Shown one piece after another: positions 1,985-60,261 of a DNA stretch of 64,000 bases. Position numbers and translations under genes: made by a program. Position 1 is the stretch's first letter; each line of letters opens with the position of its first letter. The DNA lies in IMG/VR virus record IMGVR_UViG_3300008261_000001, positions 226,180 to 290,179 of that record. One strand, given 5' to 3'. The notes under the pieces are model-generated. The model was not told the DNA's origin. It saw nothing but the letters and a program-made list of their open reading frames with translations, and did not search any database.

Positions 1985-2386
1985 ATGACAAGCAGTTCGA
2001 TTGCTCCAGTGGATAAGACACAACCTCATTTCTGTATGTACACGATGGGCGAGCAGAAAAAGGATTGTTTTAACATCGAACTTGAGAAGCCCACTTGTTT
2101 ATCCAATCTCGACCCTATTAGTTGGGGGGATTGGGCGAATATGTCTCTCCAAAACAACCCCCTCTCCCACGGTTGTTTATTTTGGGGGGTGGTACATTTA
2201 AACTTCCCCACAGAGACACCCAATCCCCATGCCTTTTTAGCTATTTACGAGAGGGGTAAGCCTGTTATTTGTTTTTACTCCACCCTCGGTTTTAGCGAGC
2301 CCTTGAAGTTCTTGCCGTCTTCTTATTTATTCCCCGAGGGATGTTTTGATTTTGTAGACCACCTCTTAGAGTTCGCCCCTCAGTAA
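1985..2386 (+). CDS. Hypothetical protein
   Basis: 3' part of ORF 1700..2386; GGGAG before ATG at 1985. Confidence 0.55.
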   Translation: MTSSSIAPVDKTQPHFCMYTMGEQKKDCFNIELEKPTCLSNLDPISWGDWANMSLQNNPLSHGCLFWGVVHLNFPTETPNPHAFLAIYERGKPVICFYSTLGFSEPLKFLPSSYLFPEGCFDFVDHLLEFAPQ

Positions 2387-2389
2387 GTT

Positions 2390-3505
2390 TCAACCCCTAG
2401 TGGAAGGGTTCCAGTTTCCAATACGGGCATCGTAGTGCTTAATCTCTAGTTCTAATGAGTGTATATGGTTCTCAATAACCCCTGCTTTTCTGAGTTTCTC
2501 ACTCTTAACTGTTATGACTTCTTCCCTAGCCGCCTCTAGTTCTAACCTCAGCTTCAAAGATCTTTTTTCTTTGATCGTATCCTCCAGAAGCCTCTTTACG
2601 CCCTGTAGTCCTTCAACGGAGTCCTCTACGGGAGGGAACCCTGTACCGAAACAACCCGTAGAGGTTGTCCAATGCCTTATTATTTTATATCCGTGCTTTC
2701 GAATCATCTTATTAGCTGTGTTGACGGACCATACTTGAAAACAACCAGGACAAGTCCCTTCGTCTGCTCTCAATGTAGGTTTCTCGGTTGTGCCTACAAA
2801 TGAGCTACCCAAATAACTCTTTGCCTTTTCCACTCCGCCTTCCTTCACCACAAAGGCGATGAGCTTACTCAAGTCGAAGGATTGCAAACTATCCGTAATA
2901 GATAAGGTTAACTTAACCTTAGAAGATCCGCTAGATACAATCAGATTTTTAACGCCCTCTAAATAAGAGACATCATACCGTACATAAGTACTCCCAGATA
3001 CTTCAAAAATATCAACCTTCGAGGGGTCGAACACAAAGGCTATTTTTCCAAAAGGGATGCTCTTGGGCTTTGATCTGCTTACTGAAATGTTTGGGTCTTG
3101 TTCGTGTGTCCTTATTATGTGGCTTACAGCGGAGTTGGCACTCGCATTGTCCACCCTGTTCCTAAAAGGGATTGTATGTTGATCATGTTGTAACGACAAT
3201 CTATTGAAATCTATGTTGGGGTACAAACTTGGGAGTTGCTGATACAATCTGTTTATCAAATCCGACACTTCTTGTCTTTGTGCGACTTGTGTAGAATCTT
3301 CGGTTTTAACCCCGTATCCCAAAACGGTGAGAGCCTCTTGAAAGTGGTTTAGATTACCAACACTTGGCATCTTACTCGTCCTTGAGTGGTTTGCCAATGC
3401 TTGTATCATACCCTGTGCAGATGGGGATAGGCTATCACTAGCCTTACGCTCTAAACGAGCTAAACGATACTCAAGATTTCTTAAAACTTCGGATGCTGTT
3501 CTCAT
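2390..3505 (-). CDS. Hypothetical protein with MRTASEVLR leader and CxxC/H/C metal motif; possible virion-internal protein
   Basis: N-terminus shared with 51950..52273; CPGC...HGY...GCFG in the C-terminal part. Confidence 0.6.
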   Translation of the reverse strand: MRTASEVLRNLEYRLARLERKASDSLSPSAQGMIQALANHSRTSKMPSVGNLNHFQEALTVLGYGVKTEDSTQVAQRQEVSDLINRLYQQLPSLYPNIDFNRLSLQHDQHTIPFRNRVDNASANSAVSHIIRTHEQDPNISVSRSKPKSIPFGKIAFVFDPSKVDIFEVSGSTYVRYDVSYLEGVKNLIVSSGSSKVKLTLSITDSLQSFDLSKLIAFVVKEGGVEKAKSYLGSSFVGTTEKPTLRADEGTCPGCFQVWSVNTANKMIRKHGYKIIRHWTTSTGCFGTGFPPVEDSVEGLQGVKRLLEDTIKEKRSLKLRLELEAAREEVITVKSEKLRKAGVIENHIHSLELEIKHYDARIGNWNPSTRG

Positions 3506-3555
3506 ATTCATTACTCCAAGTTAGGGCATATCCTAACTGGAGTATAAAAAGATTA

Positions 3556-3840
3556 TCAGTAAGTGTGATCCCAAGATAGCCTAGCCTTACCTCGGAGCTT
3601 CTTAACAGCCCTCTCCGCTCTCATGGCTTCAGATCTGTTTGCATAGGTGCAATAGACACACATAAGCACCCACGGACGATACTTAGCTGTGTACTTAGCC
3701 CCACCAGCGATTTCTCCGTTGTGTTGCCTCAGTCGCCTCTCCACATTCGTCGTGCAACCCACATAATAAAAACCCTCTGCTGGCTTACCCTTCGCTGTGG
3801 TTCTCGGCATCTGACTTTGGATCACATAGACATACCACAT
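3556..3840 (-). CDS. GIY-YIG nuclease (Slx1/UPF0213-like)
   Basis: WYVYV...YYVGCTTNVERRLRQHNG..GGAKYT..RPW..SEAMRAE. Confidence 0.9.
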   Translation of the reverse strand: MWYVYVIQSQMPRTTAKGKPAEGFYYVGCTTNVERRLRQHNGEIAGGAKYTAKYRPWVLMCVYCTYANRSEAMRAERAVKKLRGKARLSWDHTY

Positions 3841-44607: not shown

Positions 44608-45231
44608 ATGGATTGTGTTGTGGACTATACCCAAGTGCAACCAACCAAGCGTTGGCATTTGGGTGTGTGTACGATTCTTACATTTAACTTTAAGCAGATT
44701 TCACTTAAAAACAAAAAGAAACTAGGGATAGACATAGACAAAAAGCGTGAAGATATAAGACTTCTCTTTTACAAGAGGCAAGCCAAGCAGGTGGCTCGTT
44801 TGGGGCTAGACCCAGAGGATGTACTTCAAGAGGTCTACAAGGGCTTGATTATCCGCAACGAGGGTACTTGCCCTTACGACCCAAAGAAATCTGCCTTCTC
44901 CACCTATGTTGTCATGGTCATGAACTGCGTAGTCATGAACATCGTCAAAAAGCGTAAGCTCTACAACGATAGAGAGGTTGTCGGTGAAGAGGACGATGCC
45001 GCCACCTATAATGTTGCTTCCCATTATCAGAACCAAGACGAAGAGTTATTACTAGAGCAAGTTCGTGGGTCTTTTAACGGAGATTTGCTTAAGGTATATG
45101 ACGCTCTGATGGAGGGTACAAAACACGCCCATATTGCAAACGAGCTTGGTTGGGAGATTCGTAAGGTGAATATGTGCATTAAAGAGATCAGAACGAAGGT
45201 AGCTAACTACTTGGGGCGGTCTGCGGACTAA
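44608..45231 (+). CDS. Phage sigma70/ECF-like sigma factor
   Basis: EDVLQEV..YDPKKSAFSTYV (region 2), HIANELG HTH (region 4). Confidence 0.8.
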   Translation: MDCVVDYTQVQPTKRWHLGVCTILTFNFKQISLKNKKKLGIDIDKKREDIRLLFYKRQAKQVARLGLDPEDVLQEVYKGLIIRNEGTCPYDPKKSAFSTYVVMVMNCVVMNIVKKRKLYNDREVVGEEDDAATYNVASHYQNQDEELLLEQVRGSFNGDLLKVYDALMEGTKHAHIANELGWEIRKVNMCIKEIRTKVANYLGRSAD

Positions 45232-45818
45232 ACAGAGAACTTGTAAAGCCCAAAGACCCTCCTCGAAACAGGTAGGTATCCAAAACCTGGGTCTATAGAA
45301 GTACCTTGTGTGATCTGCTGTCCAAGCTCGTCTATCTTCATGTTAAAAGTAGCCCTCTCTGCTTTATTCGAATCAGACCCTACACCAAAAGTGGAAATCT
45401 CTTCGATATTGTCAGCCCAAGCCATAAGATAAATACTGCCCTCAAAAGGTTCACCCTTAAAGTCGGTTCTAAGCCCGTAAGCGAACACAGGTATCTGTAG
45501 TTCGTCTGCAATACGAGTAAGACCCAAGACTTGGTCTTTACTCAAGAACTGAGCCTCATCCACGAATAAGACTTTGATGGGTTTATCCAATACTGCTAGG
45601 TAGGGACATTCTGAGGAGCTTAAGGATTGAGCCTTCTGTGTGAAGCCGATGCGGGAAGCGACTTTGGATACTTCGTCTCTCTGTGAAGCGACATGAGGCA
45701 CTAAGACCTCGTATGGGATTTCTCGCTCAAAGCATGAGTGAGCCCTCATGATAAGGTTGGCACTCTTACCAGCGTTGACGGTGGAGTAGATGAAGGTGAG
45801 CATCGTTTTTCTTTCCAT
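45228..45818 (-). CDS. tdk: Thymidine kinase (type II), zinc ligands lost
   Basis: YSTVNAGKS, SRIG, VDEAQF, YGLRTDFKGEPFEGS. Confidence 0.92.
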   Translation of the reverse strand: MERKTMLTFIYSTVNAGKSANLIMRAHSCFEREIPYEVLVPHVASQRDEVSKVASRIGFTQKAQSLSSSECPYLAVLDKPIKVLFVDEAQFLSKDQVLGLTRIADELQIPVFAYGLRTDFKGEPFEGSIYLMAWADNIEEISTFGVGSDSNKAERATFNMKIDELGQQITQGTSIDPGFGYLPVSRRVFGLYKFSV

Positions 45819-47069: not shown

Positions 47070-48281
47070 ATGTTTGAGTATGACAGAGAAAAGGGCTTCA
47101 AGACACTTGCGGAGTACAAGCTGTTTGAGGACGGAGAAATCTACATACCACCGCATATATGGAAAGAGATTAAGGATCAGTTCCCTCGTGATGAGGTGAT
47201 ACTACACTTATCCAATCTTTTGAGGGCTATGCCTTTTCCTTTGACGCAGTATTCGGCGGCGGAGGTTCTATCCGATTGGAACAGCTTGAAGAACACCCCT
47301 CAAAATGTCGAGATGACTGAATGGACTTGTCATAGGTTGTTCGACAGTATTCCCCTTCTGTACCGAGGAAAGCCTTGCCTTATCCAATCTAACACGAAGG
47401 GCAGAAAGGTATCCAATCAGTTTACTGAGTCTGTTAGGATGGAGTGTGGTTCAAAAGCATTTCCATCCCCTATTTCGTACTGGACGGAAAACAAGGTCAT
47501 GTATTGGCTCAGATCTCTTTGGACTCTCTTAGACGATAAAGAGGGGTTAAACGGAAGGAGTATTCAACAATGCATCGCCTTAAGTTCTTATGTGGCGAGT
47601 CAGTTTAATCCTAGCACAGCTAAGTGCATTTATGACTTCTTTGGGGCTAAGAAGGTCTTGGACTTATCTATGGGTTGGGGGGATAGACTCGTAGGGTTTC
47701 TAGCTAGTGGTGCGGATAGTTATGTGGGCATAGACCCCAACACTAAGCTCCACACGCCCTATCAGAGCATCTGCGATTGGACAGAGAACAAGGGGGGCTT
47801 GGATAAGCCTAAAACGACTCGGTTCATCTGTTCACCTGCTGAGGAGGCGGACTTATCCAATATGAAGTTCGACTTTGTGTTTACCTCGCCTCCGTACTTC
47901 AACATAGAGAGGTACTCCGAGGATGGAACACAGAGCTGGAAACGCTATAAGCAGTTATCCGCTTGGCATGAGGGCTTTTTGTTCCCGTCTTTGAAGAAGG
48001 CTTGGGACAGCTTAGAGGAGGGCGGTCGGATAGCCATCAACATCGCAGACAGCTTGAGAGATAAGCATAACATCTGTACGCCCATGTTATCCTATATGGA
48101 GTCGATAGGTGCAACTTACGAGGGTGTTATGGGGTATCGTATGTCTAAGCGACCTGGGAACTTTTCTCAGTACACGGATGATATAAAAGAGATCGGTGTG
48201 TTTGGTGAGCCGATATTTATATGGAGTAAGGGGGAAGCCCCTGAGCCCAAGTGGAACCAAGATAACTTCTTTGGAGTCTGA
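47070..48281 (+). CDS. SAM-dependent DNA amino-methyltransferase-fold protein, copy 1
   Basis: VLDLSMGWGDRL (motif I), YVGIDPN, FTSPPYF (motif IV). Confidence 0.88.
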   Translation: MFEYDREKGFKTLAEYKLFEDGEIYIPPHIWKEIKDQFPRDEVILHLSNLLRAMPFPLTQYSAAEVLSDWNSLKNTPQNVEMTEWTCHRLFDSIPLLYRGKPCLIQSNTKGRKVSNQFTESVRMECGSKAFPSPISYWTENKVMYWLRSLWTLLDDKEGLNGRSIQQCIALSSYVASQFNPSTAKCIYDFFGAKKVLDLSMGWGDRLVGFLASGADSYVGIDPNTKLHTPYQSICDWTENKGGLDKPKTTRFICSPAEEADLSNMKFDFVFTSPPYFNIERYSEDGTQSWKRYKQLSAWHEGFLFPSLKKAWDSLEEGGRIAINIADSLRDKHNICTPMLSYMESIGATYEGVMGYRMSKRPGNFSQYTDDIKEIGVFGEPIFIWSKGEAPEPKWNQDNFFGV

Positions 48282-50724: not shown

Positions 50725-51945
50725 ATGTTTTTTGATTATGAGCGAACAAAGTTATCTTCTCTAGATGACTATGAACTGACGACCGACTCTAAGATTTCTA
50801 TTCCTCCCCACATATGGCGTGAGATTACAACGACTTTCAGTAAGAAAGATATCATTGAACATCTGTCCAATCTTATTGAAGTGGGGAAACTCCCTTTTCC
50901 GCTGAGGGAGTACTCATCAGCGGGGTTGGATCTTGACTTCAAGATGCTGAAAAACGAGGATTGCTTAGTAAAGCTAGGTGATTGGGAGTGCCTAAGGACA
51001 ATCCCCAACCAAGAGCTGAGTTATCGTGGGCGTAGGTGTTATTTTAACCCTTCTTCTAATGGATTAAGCGTTTCGGATAACTTCACTCAGCTTGAAAGGA
51101 TGGAGTGTTCTCACTTTGAACATAAGAGTCCAATGAGGGAATGGACGAGGGAAGGTTGTAGGTCAAAGACACGCTATATGCTGAGGGTCTTATGGACACT
51201 TAACGAGAAGGACGCTTTAGAGAACGGTGTTAGCAATAAGCAGTTAAGAGACTGCATACGGCTTGGAAACTACCAAGCAAGTCAGTTCAAGCCCTCATGT
51301 GCTAAGACGATTTATGACTTCTTTGGGGCTAAGAAGGTCTTGGACTTTTCAGCAGGTTGGGGGGACAGACTCGTTGGCTTCCTAGCGTCTAGTGCCGAGA
51401 GCTATGTGGGCATAGATCCTAACTCAAAACTAACGGATAAGTATAGAGCCATATCTAGCTTTTGCTCTACGGATAAACAGACAAGTTTCATCTGCTCCCC
51501 CGCAGAAGACGCTGACTTATCCAATATGAGATTCGACTTTGTGTTTACCTCCCCCCCTTACTTCAACATCGAGAGGTATTCAGAGGAGAGTACTCAGTCT
51601 TGGAAACGCTATAAGACGGAGAGCGACTGGTTGGAGTTTTTCTTGTTGGTCGCTTTAAAGAAATCTTGGGACAGCTTAGAAGACGGTGGGAGGATAGCTA
51701 TCAACATCGCGGATAAGGGTCATTCAAGGACAGATGTCATTTCTTCTATCTGTACGCCTATGCTGTCTTATATGGAGTCTTTAGGTGCGGTGTTTGAGGG
51801 GGTGATAGGATATAGGATGAATAAAAGACCTGGTGACAGAATGGGTTCTGTAGGTGGTTCGGTGTTCGGTGAACCTATATTCGTGTGGTCTAAAGGTGTT
51901 GCCACCGAACCCAAGTGGAAGCAAGACAACTTCTTTGGGATCTGA
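50725..51945 (+). CDS. SAM-dependent DNA amino-methyltransferase-fold protein, copy 2
   Basis: VLDFSAGWGDRL, FTSPPYF; collinear paralogue of 47070..48281. Confidence 0.88.
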   Translation: MFFDYERTKLSSLDDYELTTDSKISIPPHIWREITTTFSKKDIIEHLSNLIEVGKLPFPLREYSSAGLDLDFKMLKNEDCLVKLGDWECLRTIPNQELSYRGRRCYFNPSSNGLSVSDNFTQLERMECSHFEHKSPMREWTREGCRSKTRYMLRVLWTLNEKDALENGVSNKQLRDCIRLGNYQASQFKPSCAKTIYDFFGAKKVLDFSAGWGDRLVGFLASSAESYVGIDPNSKLTDKYRAISSFCSTDKQTSFICSPAEDADLSNMRFDFVFTSPPYFNIERYSEESTQSWKRYKTESDWLEFFLLVALKKSWDSLEDGGRIAINIADKGHSRTDVISSICTPMLSYMESLGAVFEGVIGYRMNKRPGDRMGSVGGSVFGEPIFVWSKGVATEPKWKQDNFFGI

Positions 51946-51949
51946 GCGT

Positions 51950-52273
51950 TTAACTATTCACGATGAAGTTAAACTGAGGCAACATCTGAGCGATCTTTTG
52001 AAGGCAATCGCTATCCGACCCACAAGAGACATAAATCTCTTTCATAGATCCAGCGTTTGAAGTTTCGGTCTTGTACCCTGCCTTCATGATAGTTCTCTCA
52101 ATAGTCGTAGCATCCCATGACGCTACGATGAGATTTAAGTCGTTCATACCCTCAAAGTTCACAAGCACAGGAGCTTTGACCTTATGGATGTTTCGTGAGG
52201 CAACCTTACGACCACCTTCGAGGGCGGCGAGGCGGACTTCAAGACTTCTTAATACTTCACTTGCTGTTCTCAT
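51950..52273 (-). CDS. Small protein with MRTASEVLR leader
   Basis: Leader and RBS shared with 2390..3505. Confidence 0.65.
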   Translation of the reverse strand: MRTASEVLRSLEVRLAALEGGRKVASRNIHKVKAPVLVNFEGMNDLNLIVASWDATTIERTIMKAGYKTETSNAGSMKEIYVSCGSDSDCLQKIAQMLPQFNFIVNS

Positions 52274-52352
52274 GTCATTACTCCAAGATGGGGGGTGGTA
52301 TGTTAGGTGGTTATTCCACCTATCCAAGACTACAGATTATAAACCTTTTATT

Positions 52353-58893: not shown

Positions 58894-60261
58894 ATGAGTG
58901 CATCCACATCTTACGCTAATAAGACAACTAAAGCCCTAAAAGCCCTCGCTTTATCCCTAAGGCATTACAAGAAGCCATTACCATCATCGGATAAAGAAGA
59001 GCAAAGGGTTCACATCAAGGGCATATTGGATAAGATTAAAGAACTGCCGAATGTGGTTTTATTTTTAGATTCACACATAGGGAAAACACAAGTGAAGCCC
59101 GTTAAGTCGGGTCGGGCAGGTGCTGTAAGGCTACTTGCTCAGTACTTGGGTGGGAAGTTTTCTATTGTAGAGATGGAGGAGGCGGCGGTCGGTTTTTTCC
59201 AAAAGAACTACGAAGCTAGGGCTATTCATAGGGGGCAAGCTCCACTAAATGAAACGATACCCGAGAAGATTAAAGCGTTCCTACCACCTAAAATAGTGAT
59301 TAAATTGGATAACGATGGGTACATAAAGGAAATAACCGATATGTACGACAACGAGTCGTATGGGCTTTTAGAAAAAATAAACGCACAACAAAAGATACTG
59401 CGGGAGTACAAAACCATACAGAGGAAAGTATGGAATGGATTCGATTCAAAAGACGAGGCAGTTAAAAACTTATCCATTATTTTGGGTGTTATAATAGAGA
59501 CAGGGATTAGACCTGGGAGTAGGTCTAATGGGATAAAAGAGATACTGAGTGGTAAAGAGGTGAGAAAAGAGACTTTTGGTGCGGTCTCGTTGAAGAGAAA
59601 GCACTTGGTTTTATCCAAAGACGAAATCAAGCTAGAGTTCGAAGGAAAAAAGGGGACTATCAATAGGGCGACTATCAAGGATAAAAGACTTCTGATGGCT
59701 CTCAAAGGTGTCTGTGCGGAGAGGCGAGGGGGAGATCTGTACTTGTTTCCAGATGTGGAATATGAGGACTTAGCCAAGTTCTTCAAAAAGAACTTCGAGG
59801 GGTTGAAGATAACGGACTTTAGGAAGCTAAGAGCCACTAAAGAAGTTTACGATGGGTTAAAGGCAGAACAAGCTCGTTTGTTTAAGACCATTAAGGGGTT
59901 CGTTGGGTTAGAAGTAAAGAAGCAAGAGGAGATGGTGATTGACGCTATAGCCGATACGCTTAAGAGCGTACACTCAAAGGCTCAAACGGCACTCAGCCAT
60001 GAGTCCTCCAAAACCACTGAAAAGTCTTATATCAACCCACAGATCTTGTTGTCGTTTTTATCCAATGGTGGGCTTTTACCCTCTATCGAAGAGTGTGTCT
60101 TAGAGGGGAAAACACGACTTGTATTCGACATACAATCATTTCTTAAAAACTCTAAGCGTGTCGCCTCGGTTGGGGGGGTAAAATACCCTATAATGACTAC
60201 ATCTAAGGGACTCGACAGAAACCTATCGGATATCTTGTTCGATCTGATTGAGTGCCTCTAG
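58894..60261 (+). CDS. DNA topoisomerase IB (poxvirus/bacterial-type catalytic domain)
   Basis: ETGIRPG (R), FGAVSLKRKH, FEGKKG (K), DFRK (R), LSHE (H), KSYINP (Y). Confidence 0.85.
   Translation: MSASTSYANKTTKALKALALSLRHYKKPLPSSDKEEQRVHIKGILDKIKELPNVVLFLDSHIGKTQVKPVKSGRAGAVRLLAQYLGGKFSIVEMEEAAVGFFQKNYEARAIHRGQAPLNETIPEKIKAFLPPKIVIKLDNDGYIKEITDMYDNESYGLLEKINAQQKILREYKTIQRKVWNGFDSKDEAVKNLSIILGVIIETGIRPGSRSNGIKEILSGKEVRKETFGAVSLKRKHLVLSKDEIKLEFEGKKGTINRATIKDKRLLMALKGVCAERRGGDLYLFPDVEYEDLAKFFKKNFEGLKITDFRKLRATKEVYDGLKAEQARLFKTIKGFVGLEVKKQEEMVIDAIADTLKSVHSKAQTALSHESSKTTEKSYINPQILLSFLSNGGLLPSIEECVLEGKTRLVFDIQSFLKNSKRVASVGGVKYPIMTTSKGLDRNLSDILFDLIECL

What the first reader, a model, noticed from the sequence alone, without database searches (positions are those of the whole stretch)
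3481..3520. Shared RBS plus N-terminal leader cassette on two unrelated proteins; recurring [RK]xAS motif
Seen: 2390..3505 begins MRTASEVLRNLEYRLARLERKAS and 51950..52273 begins MRTASEVLRSLEVRLAALEGGRKVAS, after which they diverge. The upstream DNA is also conserved (cttggagtaatgaatatgagaacagc vs cttggagtaatgacatgagaacagc), and both follow the late-type motif. Similar [RK]-x-A-S words occur in 57468 (KTAS, RLAS), 61130 (RIAS), 11001 (KQAS) and near the end of topoisomerase IB (RVAS). Known: T4 internal proteins carry a cleavable capsid-targeting leader. Inference: a portable capsid-targeting/protease-cleavage tag that loads diverse cargo into the head for injection.
Basis: partly seen in the sequence, partly recalled or inferred. 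Interest (0 to 1): 0.6.

Follow-up and report, generated by a model that had tools for sequence, protein, structure and literature searches.

The report
Shared head-loading leader peptide, jumbo phage
A conserved 20-residue N-terminal helix ending in an Arg/Lys-x-Ala-Ser site is fused to at least 16 otherwise unrelated proteins of this 290-kb freshwater phage, and to hundreds of protein families in related uncultured phages. It is most likely an address tag that loads them into the forming head and is then cut off by the head protease.

Summary
The two window genes (2390..3505 and 51950..52273, both minus strand) share the ribosome-binding 13-mer and a 19-residue leader, and their remaining sequence is unrelated. 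The whole 290-kb genome carries 16 strong copies and one weak one. Four lie inside the head-gene module, between the portal and protease genes and just after the capsid gene. A leader profile finds 709 protein clusters in public metagenomes, nearly all with the leader at residue 1, with very diverse unannotated cargo.

The [RK]-x-A-S word is about 13-fold enriched in leader proteins and in four head-module proteins. It sits at fixed positions in the protease and scaffold of relatives. It also closes two unrelated leader types, in a sister phage and in Bacillus phage G. One cargo family exists with and without the leader, and the leaderless forms start just after the motif. The protease model matches herpesvirus and T4 head proteases best.

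Best reading: a T4-like capsid-targeting propeptide, removed at [RK]-x-A|S. This is inferred from sequence only; packaging, cleavage and injection are untested.

The parts
2390..3505 (-). Leader-bearing gene 1 (371 aa). The cargo has no relatives outside its own cluster; its C-terminal part has a Cys-rich stretch and a coiled-coil-like tail.
3449..3505 (-). Leader coding region, residues 1-19 (MRTASEVLRNLEYRLARLE)
3437..3448 (-). R-K-A-S word directly after the leader (residues 20-23); proposed protease site, cut after Ala
3508..3520 (-). Shared 13-mer CTTGGAGTAATGA, which holds the Shine-Dalgarno GGAG (3514-3517)
3513..3543 (-). Hairpin in the 5' untranslated region. ACTCC in the 5' arm pairs with GGAGT (the Shine-Dalgarno sequence) in the 3' arm.
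3543..3548 (-). TTTATA late-type promoter-like word that abuts the hairpin
51950..52273 (-). Leader-bearing gene 2 (107 aa); cargo has no family match
52217..52273 (-). Leader coding region, residues 1-19 (MRTASEVLRSLEVRLAALE)
52196..52207 (-). K-V-A-S word after the leader (residues 23-26); proposed protease site
52275..52287 (-). Second copy of the shared 13-mer with the Shine-Dalgarno sequence (52281-52284). This copy lacks a strong hairpin that would sequester the Shine-Dalgarno sequence.
52338..52343 (-). TTTATA promoter-like word upstream of gene 2

Best explanation
The leader is a portable capsid-targeting propeptide of a phage-G-like jumbo myovirus. Shown: a conserved peptide, consensus M-R-(R)-T-A-S-E-V-[LI]-R-x-L-E-x-R-[IV]-A-R-L-E followed by [RKG]-x-[AS]-small, heads many unrelated proteins, each expressed from its own late-type promoter. 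Inferred: the helix docks the protein into the assembling prohead. The likeliest partner is the scaffold core, possibly through the same receptor that holds the protease's conserved C-terminal tail. After the shell closes, the assemblin-fold head protease cuts after the Ala of [RK]-x-A|S. The same site type would trim the protease, chop the scaffold, and remove the scaffold's C-terminal capsid-binding tail. The mature cargo would stay inside the head and probably enter the host cell with the DNA.
For: (1) Copy number and position: 16 strong copies in the genome. Fourteen are N-terminal, one is internal and one is C-terminal.
(2) Head context: two leader genes lie between the portal and protease genes, and two directly follow the major capsid gene. 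The related contig G002 has the same arrangement.
(3) Selection on the peptide: invariant Ser, Arg and Leu residues use both codon families.
(4) Breadth and modularity: 709 clusters hit at E<=1e-3. Of the best 150, 142 carry the leader at the N-terminus. 138 cargo sequences fall into 119 BLAST groups with practically no Pfam hits.
(5) Natural leader-plus and leader-minus forms: one cargo family has 33 leader-bearing and 34 leaderless members. The Met of the leaderless forms aligns right after the [KR]-x-[AS]-N of the others.
(6) Motif statistics: [RK].A[SAGT] occurs within 10 residues after the leader in 49% of representatives, against 1.5% of background windows. In this genome it is 13-fold enriched in leader proteins and 12.6-fold in four head proteins.
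(7) Positional conservation: R25 and W21 are present in 118 of 118 protease homologs, and A27 and [SA]28 in 117 of 118. A motif lies 16-23 residues before the scaffold C-terminus in three phages.
(8) Two other leader types end in the same word. The 11-copy leader of LR745208.1 ends [RK]-x-A-[GAM]. The start of 8 phage G proteins reads MKRLIKK[ASG].
(9) Protease fold: the best structural matches among 48,161 chains are varicella-zoster virus protease (Z 7.2) and T4 gp21 (Z 6.2); PHROG head maturation protease hit at 5.5e-17.
(10) Herpesvirus assemblins cut at x-A|S or x-A|T sites, including a site that frees the scaffold from the capsid protein (PMC4498786). T4 internal proteins share only a capsid-targeting sequence (PMC3012670).
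Against: There is no protein-level evidence. The phage is uncultured, no virion proteome exists, and no RNA runs hold it. The complex prediction of leader with the scaffold mid-segment gave no answer. The protease model is of modest quality (pLDDT 59) and the structural Z scores are in the range where chance matches occur; Foldseek found nothing significant. Motif conservation in the protease N-terminus could be structural rather than a cut site. The leader itself begins with the same word (M-R-T-A-S), which is odd for a cleavage site. Many leader genes lie far from the head module, among replication genes. A conserved K-L-A-A-S in the capsid protein is probably not cut, so the word alone is not sufficient. 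Cargo isoelectric points range from 4.6 to 9.4, unlike the basic T4 internal proteins.
Confidence: 0.55

Rival explanations
1. The leader is a short coiled-coil assembly tag. It joins these proteins to each other or to another structure (outer capsid, tail, or an intracellular assembly), not to the head interior. The following motif is just part of the tag.
For: The leader has a heptad-like pattern (L8, L11, I15, L18) with Glu and Arg at flanking positions, and is predicted helical. Copies also occur internally and at C-termini, which suits a pairing module. Many genes lie outside the head module.
Against: This does not explain why the same [RK]-x-A-small word ends three unrelated leader types, is enriched in scaffold and protease, and marks the start of leaderless cargo homologs. 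The amphipathic moment is not exceptional (12% of shuffles reach it).
Confidence: 0.2
2. The leader is a pro-sequence or protease-recognition handle. It keeps the cargo inactive, or marks it for processing by the head protease or a host protease, without directing it into the head.
For: The cleavage-type motif is the most conserved common feature across leader types. Leaderless homologs show that the cargo folds without the leader.
Against: A head protease is normally active only inside the procapsid, so its substrates must get in. Four genes sit in the head module. The 20-residue helix is much more conserved than a mere spacer would need to be.
Confidence: 0.12
3. The conservation is at the nucleic-acid level: a promoter, untranslated region and start-region cassette spread by recombination for high late expression. 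On this view the peptide has no role.
For: About 75 nt upstream, including a hairpin loop sequence, is nearly identical in roughly eight copies. The first four codons are almost invariant in DNA.
Against: Beyond codon 4 the invariant residues are written with different codons: 591 synonymous against 332 non-synonymous pairwise codon differences. The peptide is conserved in distant phages whose upstream DNA differs.
Confidence: 0.03
4. It is an export signal (Tat- or Sec-like) for proteins that act outside the cytoplasm.
For: Many relatives start M-R-R, which superficially resembles a twin-arginine motif.
Against: No hydrophobic core follows. The segment is a charged amphipathic helix with mean hydrophobicity -0.17. 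In this genome most copies have a single Arg.
Confidence: 0.01

Closest known systems
Capsid targeting sequence (CTS) of the phage T4 internal proteins IPI, IPII and IPIII
   Same: A short conserved N-terminal peptide is the only thing shared by a diverse set of proteins. It ends at the head protease's site, the genes are late and scattered, and the cargo is hypervariable between relatives (PMC3012670).
   Different: There is no sequence similarity. The leader is 20-25 residues and helical, against about 10 in T4. The proposed cut is after Ala in [RK]-x-A|S, not after Glu. The phage has no T4-type protease or capsid family. There are 16 or more cargo proteins per genome and 709 clusters overall, far more than the T4 set.
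Herpesvirus assemblin with its release and maturation sites
   Same: The protease model matches assemblins best. The protease domain is followed by a linker and a helical C-terminal extension. The proposed Ala|Ser cut includes a site 16-23 residues from the scaffold C-terminus that would free the scaffold from the capsid protein (PMC4498786).
   Different: The preferred residue three positions before the cut is basic (Arg or Lys) rather than Val, Leu or Tyr. The scaffold is a separate gene. No cleavage has been demonstrated here.
Propeptides of head proteins in phiKZ-like phages (phiKZ gp175, SPN3US gp245)
   Same: These are jumbo phages in which many internal head and ejection proteins carry N-terminal propeptides removed by the prohead protease. 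Several motif copies lie in tandem within the propeptides (PMC10052503).
   Different: Those propeptides are not similar to each other in sequence and are cut after Glu (the A-x-E type, from my own knowledge). Here one conserved leader is reused.
Encapsulin cargo-loading peptides
   Same: A short portable peptide directs diverse cargo into a shell built from an HK97-fold protein.
   Different: Encapsulin tags are usually C-terminal, are not removed, and bind the shell protein directly. Here a portal, scaffold and protease are present and the tag looks cleavable. This comparison rests on my own knowledge and was not tested.
T4 late genes e and soc: Shine-Dalgarno sequence hidden in a hairpin of read-through transcripts
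   Same: A late-promoter word abuts a hairpin whose 3' arm holds the Shine-Dalgarno sequence. A late transcription start inside the 5' arm would free the ribosome site.
   Different: The transcription start is unknown here. The arrangement is common to many genes of this phage, not only to leader genes. The comparison with T4 rests on my own knowledge.

Membership tests
T4-type capsid-targeting-sequence internal proteins | A short N-terminal peptide shared by otherwise unrelated proteins of one phage | tested here: met
   16 strong copies in the genome; the two window cargos are unrelated
T4-type capsid-targeting-sequence internal proteins | The tag ends at the consensus site of the phage's own prohead protease | tested here: inconclusive
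   The [RK]-x-A-small word ends the tag and is enriched or position-conserved in scaffold and protease. The protease's real specificity is unknown.
T4-type capsid-targeting-sequence internal proteins | The proteins are present, processed, inside the mature head | not testable with these tools
   Uncultured phage with no proteome; no RNA run holds it
T4-type capsid-targeting-sequence internal proteins | Homology to the T4 system (T4-type prohead protease PF03420, capsid protein PF07068) | tested here: not met
   No match to either family in the genome. The resemblance is functional analogy, not membership.
T4-type capsid-targeting-sequence internal proteins | The tag is transferable between cargo proteins | tested here: met
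   The same cargo family occurs with the leader, without it, and behind an extra N-domain. This is natural evidence only.
Assemblin-fold head maturation proteases (herpesvirus assemblin, T4 gp21) | Fold of the catalytic domain | tested here: inconclusive
   The top two of 48,161 chains are varicella-zoster virus protease (Z 7.2, 116 residues aligned) and T4 gp21 (Z 6.2). The model has pLDDT 59 and Foldseek found nothing significant. PHROG 18299 head maturation protease hit at 5.5e-17.
Assemblin-fold head maturation proteases (herpesvirus assemblin, T4 gp21) | Catalytic Ser and His residues in place | not tested
   Invariant His and Ser residues exist in 118 homologs (for example H59, H131, S182) but were not mapped onto the known triads.
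Phage-G-like jumbo myoviruses | Major capsid protein homologous to phage G gp27, and the same head-gene order | tested here: met
   PDB 6wkk gp27 at 1.1e-63; 39% identity to phage G, 47% to Tunturi_5, 90% to LR745208.1; the order portal, protease, scaffold-like, decoration-like, capsid is shared
Tat or Sec signal peptides | A hydrophobic core after the basic N-terminus | tested here: not met
   The segment is a charged amphipathic helix with mean hydrophobicity -0.17

The most novel reading that the evidence does not exclude
Phage-G-like jumbo phages would share a clade-wide system of interchangeable address tags. At least three unrelated N-terminal leader types were seen: this one, the 11-copy type of LR745208.1, and the MKRLIKK start of phage G. 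All end in [RK]-x-A|small and would be read by an assemblin-fold protease with herpesvirus-like Ala|Ser specificity. That protease would also release the scaffold at a site like the herpesvirus maturation site. The tags would load a fast-evolving arsenal of hundreds of unknown protein families into the head for delivery into the host. That would make the leader a sequence handle for finding injected phage effectors in metagenomes.
Probability: 0.35. Interest if true: 0.8.

Novelty: new variant of a known kind. Interest (0 to 1): 0.68.

Why it matters
If the reading is right, a simple sequence profile picks out the packaged, and probably injected, proteins of a large and widespread group of uncultured jumbo phages. 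That amounts to hundreds of unannotated families that are natural candidates for anti-defence or host-takeover functions.

It would also show a phage head protease that cuts Ala|Ser sites, including a tail-removing site in the scaffold. This is the logic known from herpesviruses, and it would strengthen the evolutionary link between the two maturation systems.

The leader could serve as a natural tag for loading foreign proteins into large capsids.

The claim is directly testable in the cultured relatives, phage G and Tunturi_5.

Tried and rejected
- DNA search of the leader gene region against GenBank phages found no match. A tblastn search with a consensus leader against the same 50,697 records also found none, so no cultured phage carries this leader type.
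- Pfam and PHROG scans of the two window proteins and of 15 genome copies gave nothing, except phrog_9437 for one cargo. Pfam on 147 representatives gave practically nothing.
- The cargo of the 371-aa window protein has no relatives beyond its own cluster. The protein atlas gave only unnamed viral clusters.
- The type-A leader is absent from the sister phage LR745208.1. That led to the discovery of its own leader type.
- Complex prediction of leader residues 1-45 with scaffold residues 225-330 gave no verdict (ipSAE 0.02). It counts neither for nor against binding.
- RNAalifold on a MAFFT alignment of 16 upstream regions gave no consensus structure, because the hairpins differ in length and the alignment is poor. 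Single-sequence folds do show the hairpins.
- Foldseek of the protease model and of the cargo model against the PDB found no significant hit.
- Literature searches for the peptide words and for phage G processing found no description of such a leader. The phage G supplementary table as held gave no per-protein virion data for the MKRLIKK proteins.
- Export-signal and nucleic-acid-only explanations were considered and rejected.
- No alternative genetic code was used. Proteins known only from annotated-record loci were kept out of fold and profile jobs.

Full report
**Observation.** Both genes lie on the minus strand. Window 2390..3505 encodes a 371-aa protein and 51950..52273 a 107-aa protein. 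Their first 19 residues differ at four positions and are followed by R-K-A-S and G-G-R-K-V-A-S. Past residue 26 the proteins are unrelated. The 13-mer CTTGGAGTAATGA, which holds the Shine-Dalgarno GGAG, occurs only at 3508-3520 and 52275-52287; 0.15 matches are expected by chance. A TTTATA word lies 40-70 nt upstream of each gene.

**The genome.** The window is the last 64 kb of a 290,179-bp virus record, estimated 93% complete. The phage is a myovirus: the window holds baseplate wedge genes. Its major capsid protein is a homolog of Bacillus phage G gp27 (PDB 6wkk, 1.1e-63). It is 90% identical to that of the uncultured 485-kb phage LR745208.1 and 47% to Tunturiibacter phage Tunturi_5. T4-type protease and capsid families are absent. 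Near-identical DNA occurs in freshwater and lake metagenomes of 13 studies; no RNA run holds it.

**The leader family.**
- A search of the whole genome and a small profile find 16 strong copies and one weak one.
- Fourteen head an open reading frame. One is internal (gene 159593-160261) and one is C-terminal (ORF 45009-45545).
- Invariant positions are R2, A4, L11, R14, A16, L18 and E19.
- Invariant Ser, Arg and Leu residues are written with codons from both families. There are 591 synonymous against 332 non-synonymous pairwise codon differences, so selection acts on the peptide. Only the first four codons are nearly fixed in DNA.

**Head context.** PHROG scans place the following on genome 145.9-160.7 kb:
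- the large terminase and the portal;
- two leader genes;
- a 206-aa and a 1062-aa protein;
- a 461-aa head maturation protease;
- a 494-517-aa acidic scaffold-like protein;
- a decoration-like protein and the major capsid protein;
- two further leader genes.

The related 143-kb contig G002 (protease 60% identical) has the same order, with a leader gene next to the portal gene. In another relative the leader heads a 140-aa protein that repeats the acidic ADDMWADDLEADD segment of the scaffold.

**Spread.**
- A pattern scan of IMG/VR found 27 loci, several per contig, always at N-termini.
- The leader profile, run against 1.84 billion representative proteins, gave 709 clusters at E<=1e-3. Of the best 150, 142 carry the leader within the first six residues.
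- The cargo of 138 representatives falls into 119 BLAST groups, and Pfam recognises practically none.
- Sources are Tara Oceans, the Global Ocean Sampling survey and JGI freshwater samples. The contigs reach 251-317 kb and carry the same protease family.
- No GenBank phage has the leader. I found no paper that describes it.

**The [RK]-x-A-S word.**
- Genome-wide there are 119 occurrences against 52.7 expected; permuted control words give 36-68.
- The excess sits in leader proteins (26 against 2.0) and in four head-module proteins: a 796-aa protein with ten sites, the scaffold-like protein, the protease and the 1062-aa protein (21 against 1.7). All other proteins show 72 against 49.
- Among 141 representatives, [RK].A[SAGT] lies within ten residues after R-L-E in 49%, against 1.5% of background windows.

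**Comparative support for a cleavage site.**
- In 118 protease homologs (44-98% identical) the N-terminal W-D-K-V-R-V-A-S-G is almost invariant: R25 in 118 of 118, A27 and [SA]28 in 117 of 118. A second K-T-A-S word is also conserved.
- The scaffold-like proteins of this phage, G002, LR745208.1 and Tunturi_5 all have R-E-A-S or K-V-A-S 16-23 residues before a conserved C-terminal tail. In herpesviruses, the maturation site (V-Q-A|S in pseudorabies virus) removes the scaffold tail that binds the capsid protein (PMC4498786).
- LR745208.1 lacks this leader but has 11 copies of a different 30-residue leader. Every copy ends in [RK]-x-A-[GAM] before the sequences diverge.
- Phage G has eight proteins that start M-K-R-L-I-x-K, with none for the reversed control pattern. 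These continue as K-K-A-S, K-T-A-A or K-K-S-x.
- The cargo of gene 160297-160686 (phrog_9437) has 67 homologs: 33 with the leader and 34 without. The start of the leaderless forms aligns immediately after the [KR]-x-[AS]-N of the leader-bearing ones. Some members have an extra N-domain before an internal leader.
- The AlphaFold model of this protein (pLDDT 88.6) shows the leader as one long helix that runs into a small alpha/beta domain, with a confidence dip at the linker.

**The protease.** There is no Pfam match, but there is a PHROG head-maturation-protease match. The model is modest (pLDDT 59). Even so, an exhaustive structural comparison ranks varicella-zoster virus protease first (Z 7.2, rmsd 3.8, 116 residues) and T4 gp21 second (Z 6.2). 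Cytomegalovirus and Kaposi's sarcoma herpesvirus proteases also appear. Foldseek alone was not significant. The conserved C-terminal tail of the protease ([DE]-x-x-R-L-V-R-L-A-K-L-L-S) resembles the leader core R-[IV]-A-R-L-E-[RK]. In LR745208.1 the protease tail T-L-I-R-L-A-S resembles that phage's own leader K-L-I-R-L-A-H. This suggests that the leaders copy the protease's own targeting helix. That is inference only.

**Mechanism proposed.**
- Shown: a portable, peptide-level conserved leader; its link to head genes; and the recurrent terminal motif.
- Inferred: docking into the prohead core, cleavage after Ala by the head protease, retention in the head and delivery into the host.
- The scaffold mid helix (L-K-x-A-N-A-R-L-A-x-Q-V-R-K-L-A-D) is conserved in the two phages that use this leader and is replaced in LR745208.1. 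That makes it my preferred receptor, but the complex prediction gave no verdict.

**Upstream region.** Twelve of 16 leader genes have a strong hairpin in which ACTCC pairs with the Shine-Dalgarno GGAGT, directly after the TTTATA word. The stems differ in sequence but keep their pairing. The same layout, TTTAT[AG] followed by a hairpin with the Shine-Dalgarno sequence in its 3' arm, precedes many other genes, including head and baseplate genes. It is therefore a general late-gene feature. About eight leader genes share a nearly identical 75-nt version, which points to spread of the whole cassette by duplication or recombination.

**Verdict.** The leader is a real, widespread and previously undescribed family. 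It works most probably like the T4 capsid-targeting sequence, but it is not related to it. The proposed cleavage logic resembles that of herpesvirus assemblin. The joint reading (targeting plus cleavage) has confidence 0.55.

Noticed in passing
window 58894-60261 (+): A 455-aa protein matches the eukaryotic-type DNA topoisomerase I catalytic core (PF01028, 1.8e-10, above the curated cut-off). A type IB topoisomerase in a phage is uncommon. Its R-V-A-S word near the C-terminus is not distinguishable from chance.
   Followed up: partly
whole genome; e.g. window 3513-3548 (-), genome 223689, 138951, 205977, 172626: Many genes are preceded by TTTAT[AG] directly followed by a hairpin whose 3' arm holds the Shine-Dalgarno sequence. 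This would hide the ribosome site in read-through transcripts if late transcription starts inside the 5' arm. ATTTATA is under-represented genome-wide (22 occurrences against about 60 expected).
   Followed up: partly
LR745208.1 (loci L064, L073-L083): The sister phage, whose capsid protein is 90% identical, lacks this leader. It has 11 copies of another 30-residue N-terminal leader (start M-T-T-L-R-S-K-L-I-R-L-A-H) on ORFs of 143-594 aa. All copies end in [RK]-x-A-[GAM].
   Followed up: partly
Bacillus phage G NC_023719.1 (loci L066, L084-L091): Eight proteins start M/L-K-R-L-I-x-K (0 hits for the reversed control pattern), three of them in the head module (gp13, gp17, gp38). This may be a short counterpart of the leader in the only long-cultured relative.
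   Followed up: partly
genome 45009-45545 (-), 159593-160261 (+); G002 115572-115973; proteins P0295, P0296, P0299: Leader copies also occur at a C-terminus or in the middle of proteins. A conserved N-domain of about 90 aa followed by the leader recurs in several phages, sometimes fused to a cargo. It could be an adaptor that pairs with N-terminal leaders, or a two-part cargo.
   Followed up: partly
genome 154859-156244 (protease), residues about 190-233: The head protease carries an inserted Cys/His cluster (C192, C195, C206, H208, C231 and H233 are invariant in 118 homologs; zinc-ribbon Pfam hits below threshold). It also has a well-predicted helical C-terminal domain (pLDDT about 90).
   Followed up: no
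genome 156273-157757 (scaffold-like protein): The acidic scaffold-like protein has an EF-hand-like loop (D-S-D-A-D-G-F-L-D-H-E-E; Pfam EF-hand hits just below cut-off).
   Followed up: no
window 47070-48281 and 50725-51945 (+): Two paralogous genes of 403 and 406 aa (phrog_12517, with a weak DNA-methyltransferase-like region) lie 2.4 kb apart. The second ends 5 nt before the stop codon of leader gene 2 on the opposite strand.
   Followed up: no
window 13714-40640 (+): A run of very large genes (1100, 2451, 1066, 1862 and 1722 aa) follows the baseplate wedge genes. They are presumably baseplate or fibre proteins; most have no family match.
   Followed up: no
window 2300-3650: Near-identical DNA of this phage is present in freshwater, lake, lagoon and aquaculture metagenomes of 13 separate studies (2019-2025), so the phage is widespread.
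   Followed up: no
genome 160297-160686 (locus L016): The conserved cargo gene that follows the capsid gene folds with high confidence into a small alpha/beta domain. Its only weak likeness is to the T4 MotA C-terminal DNA-binding domain (probability 0.8, TM 0.49).
   Followed up: partly
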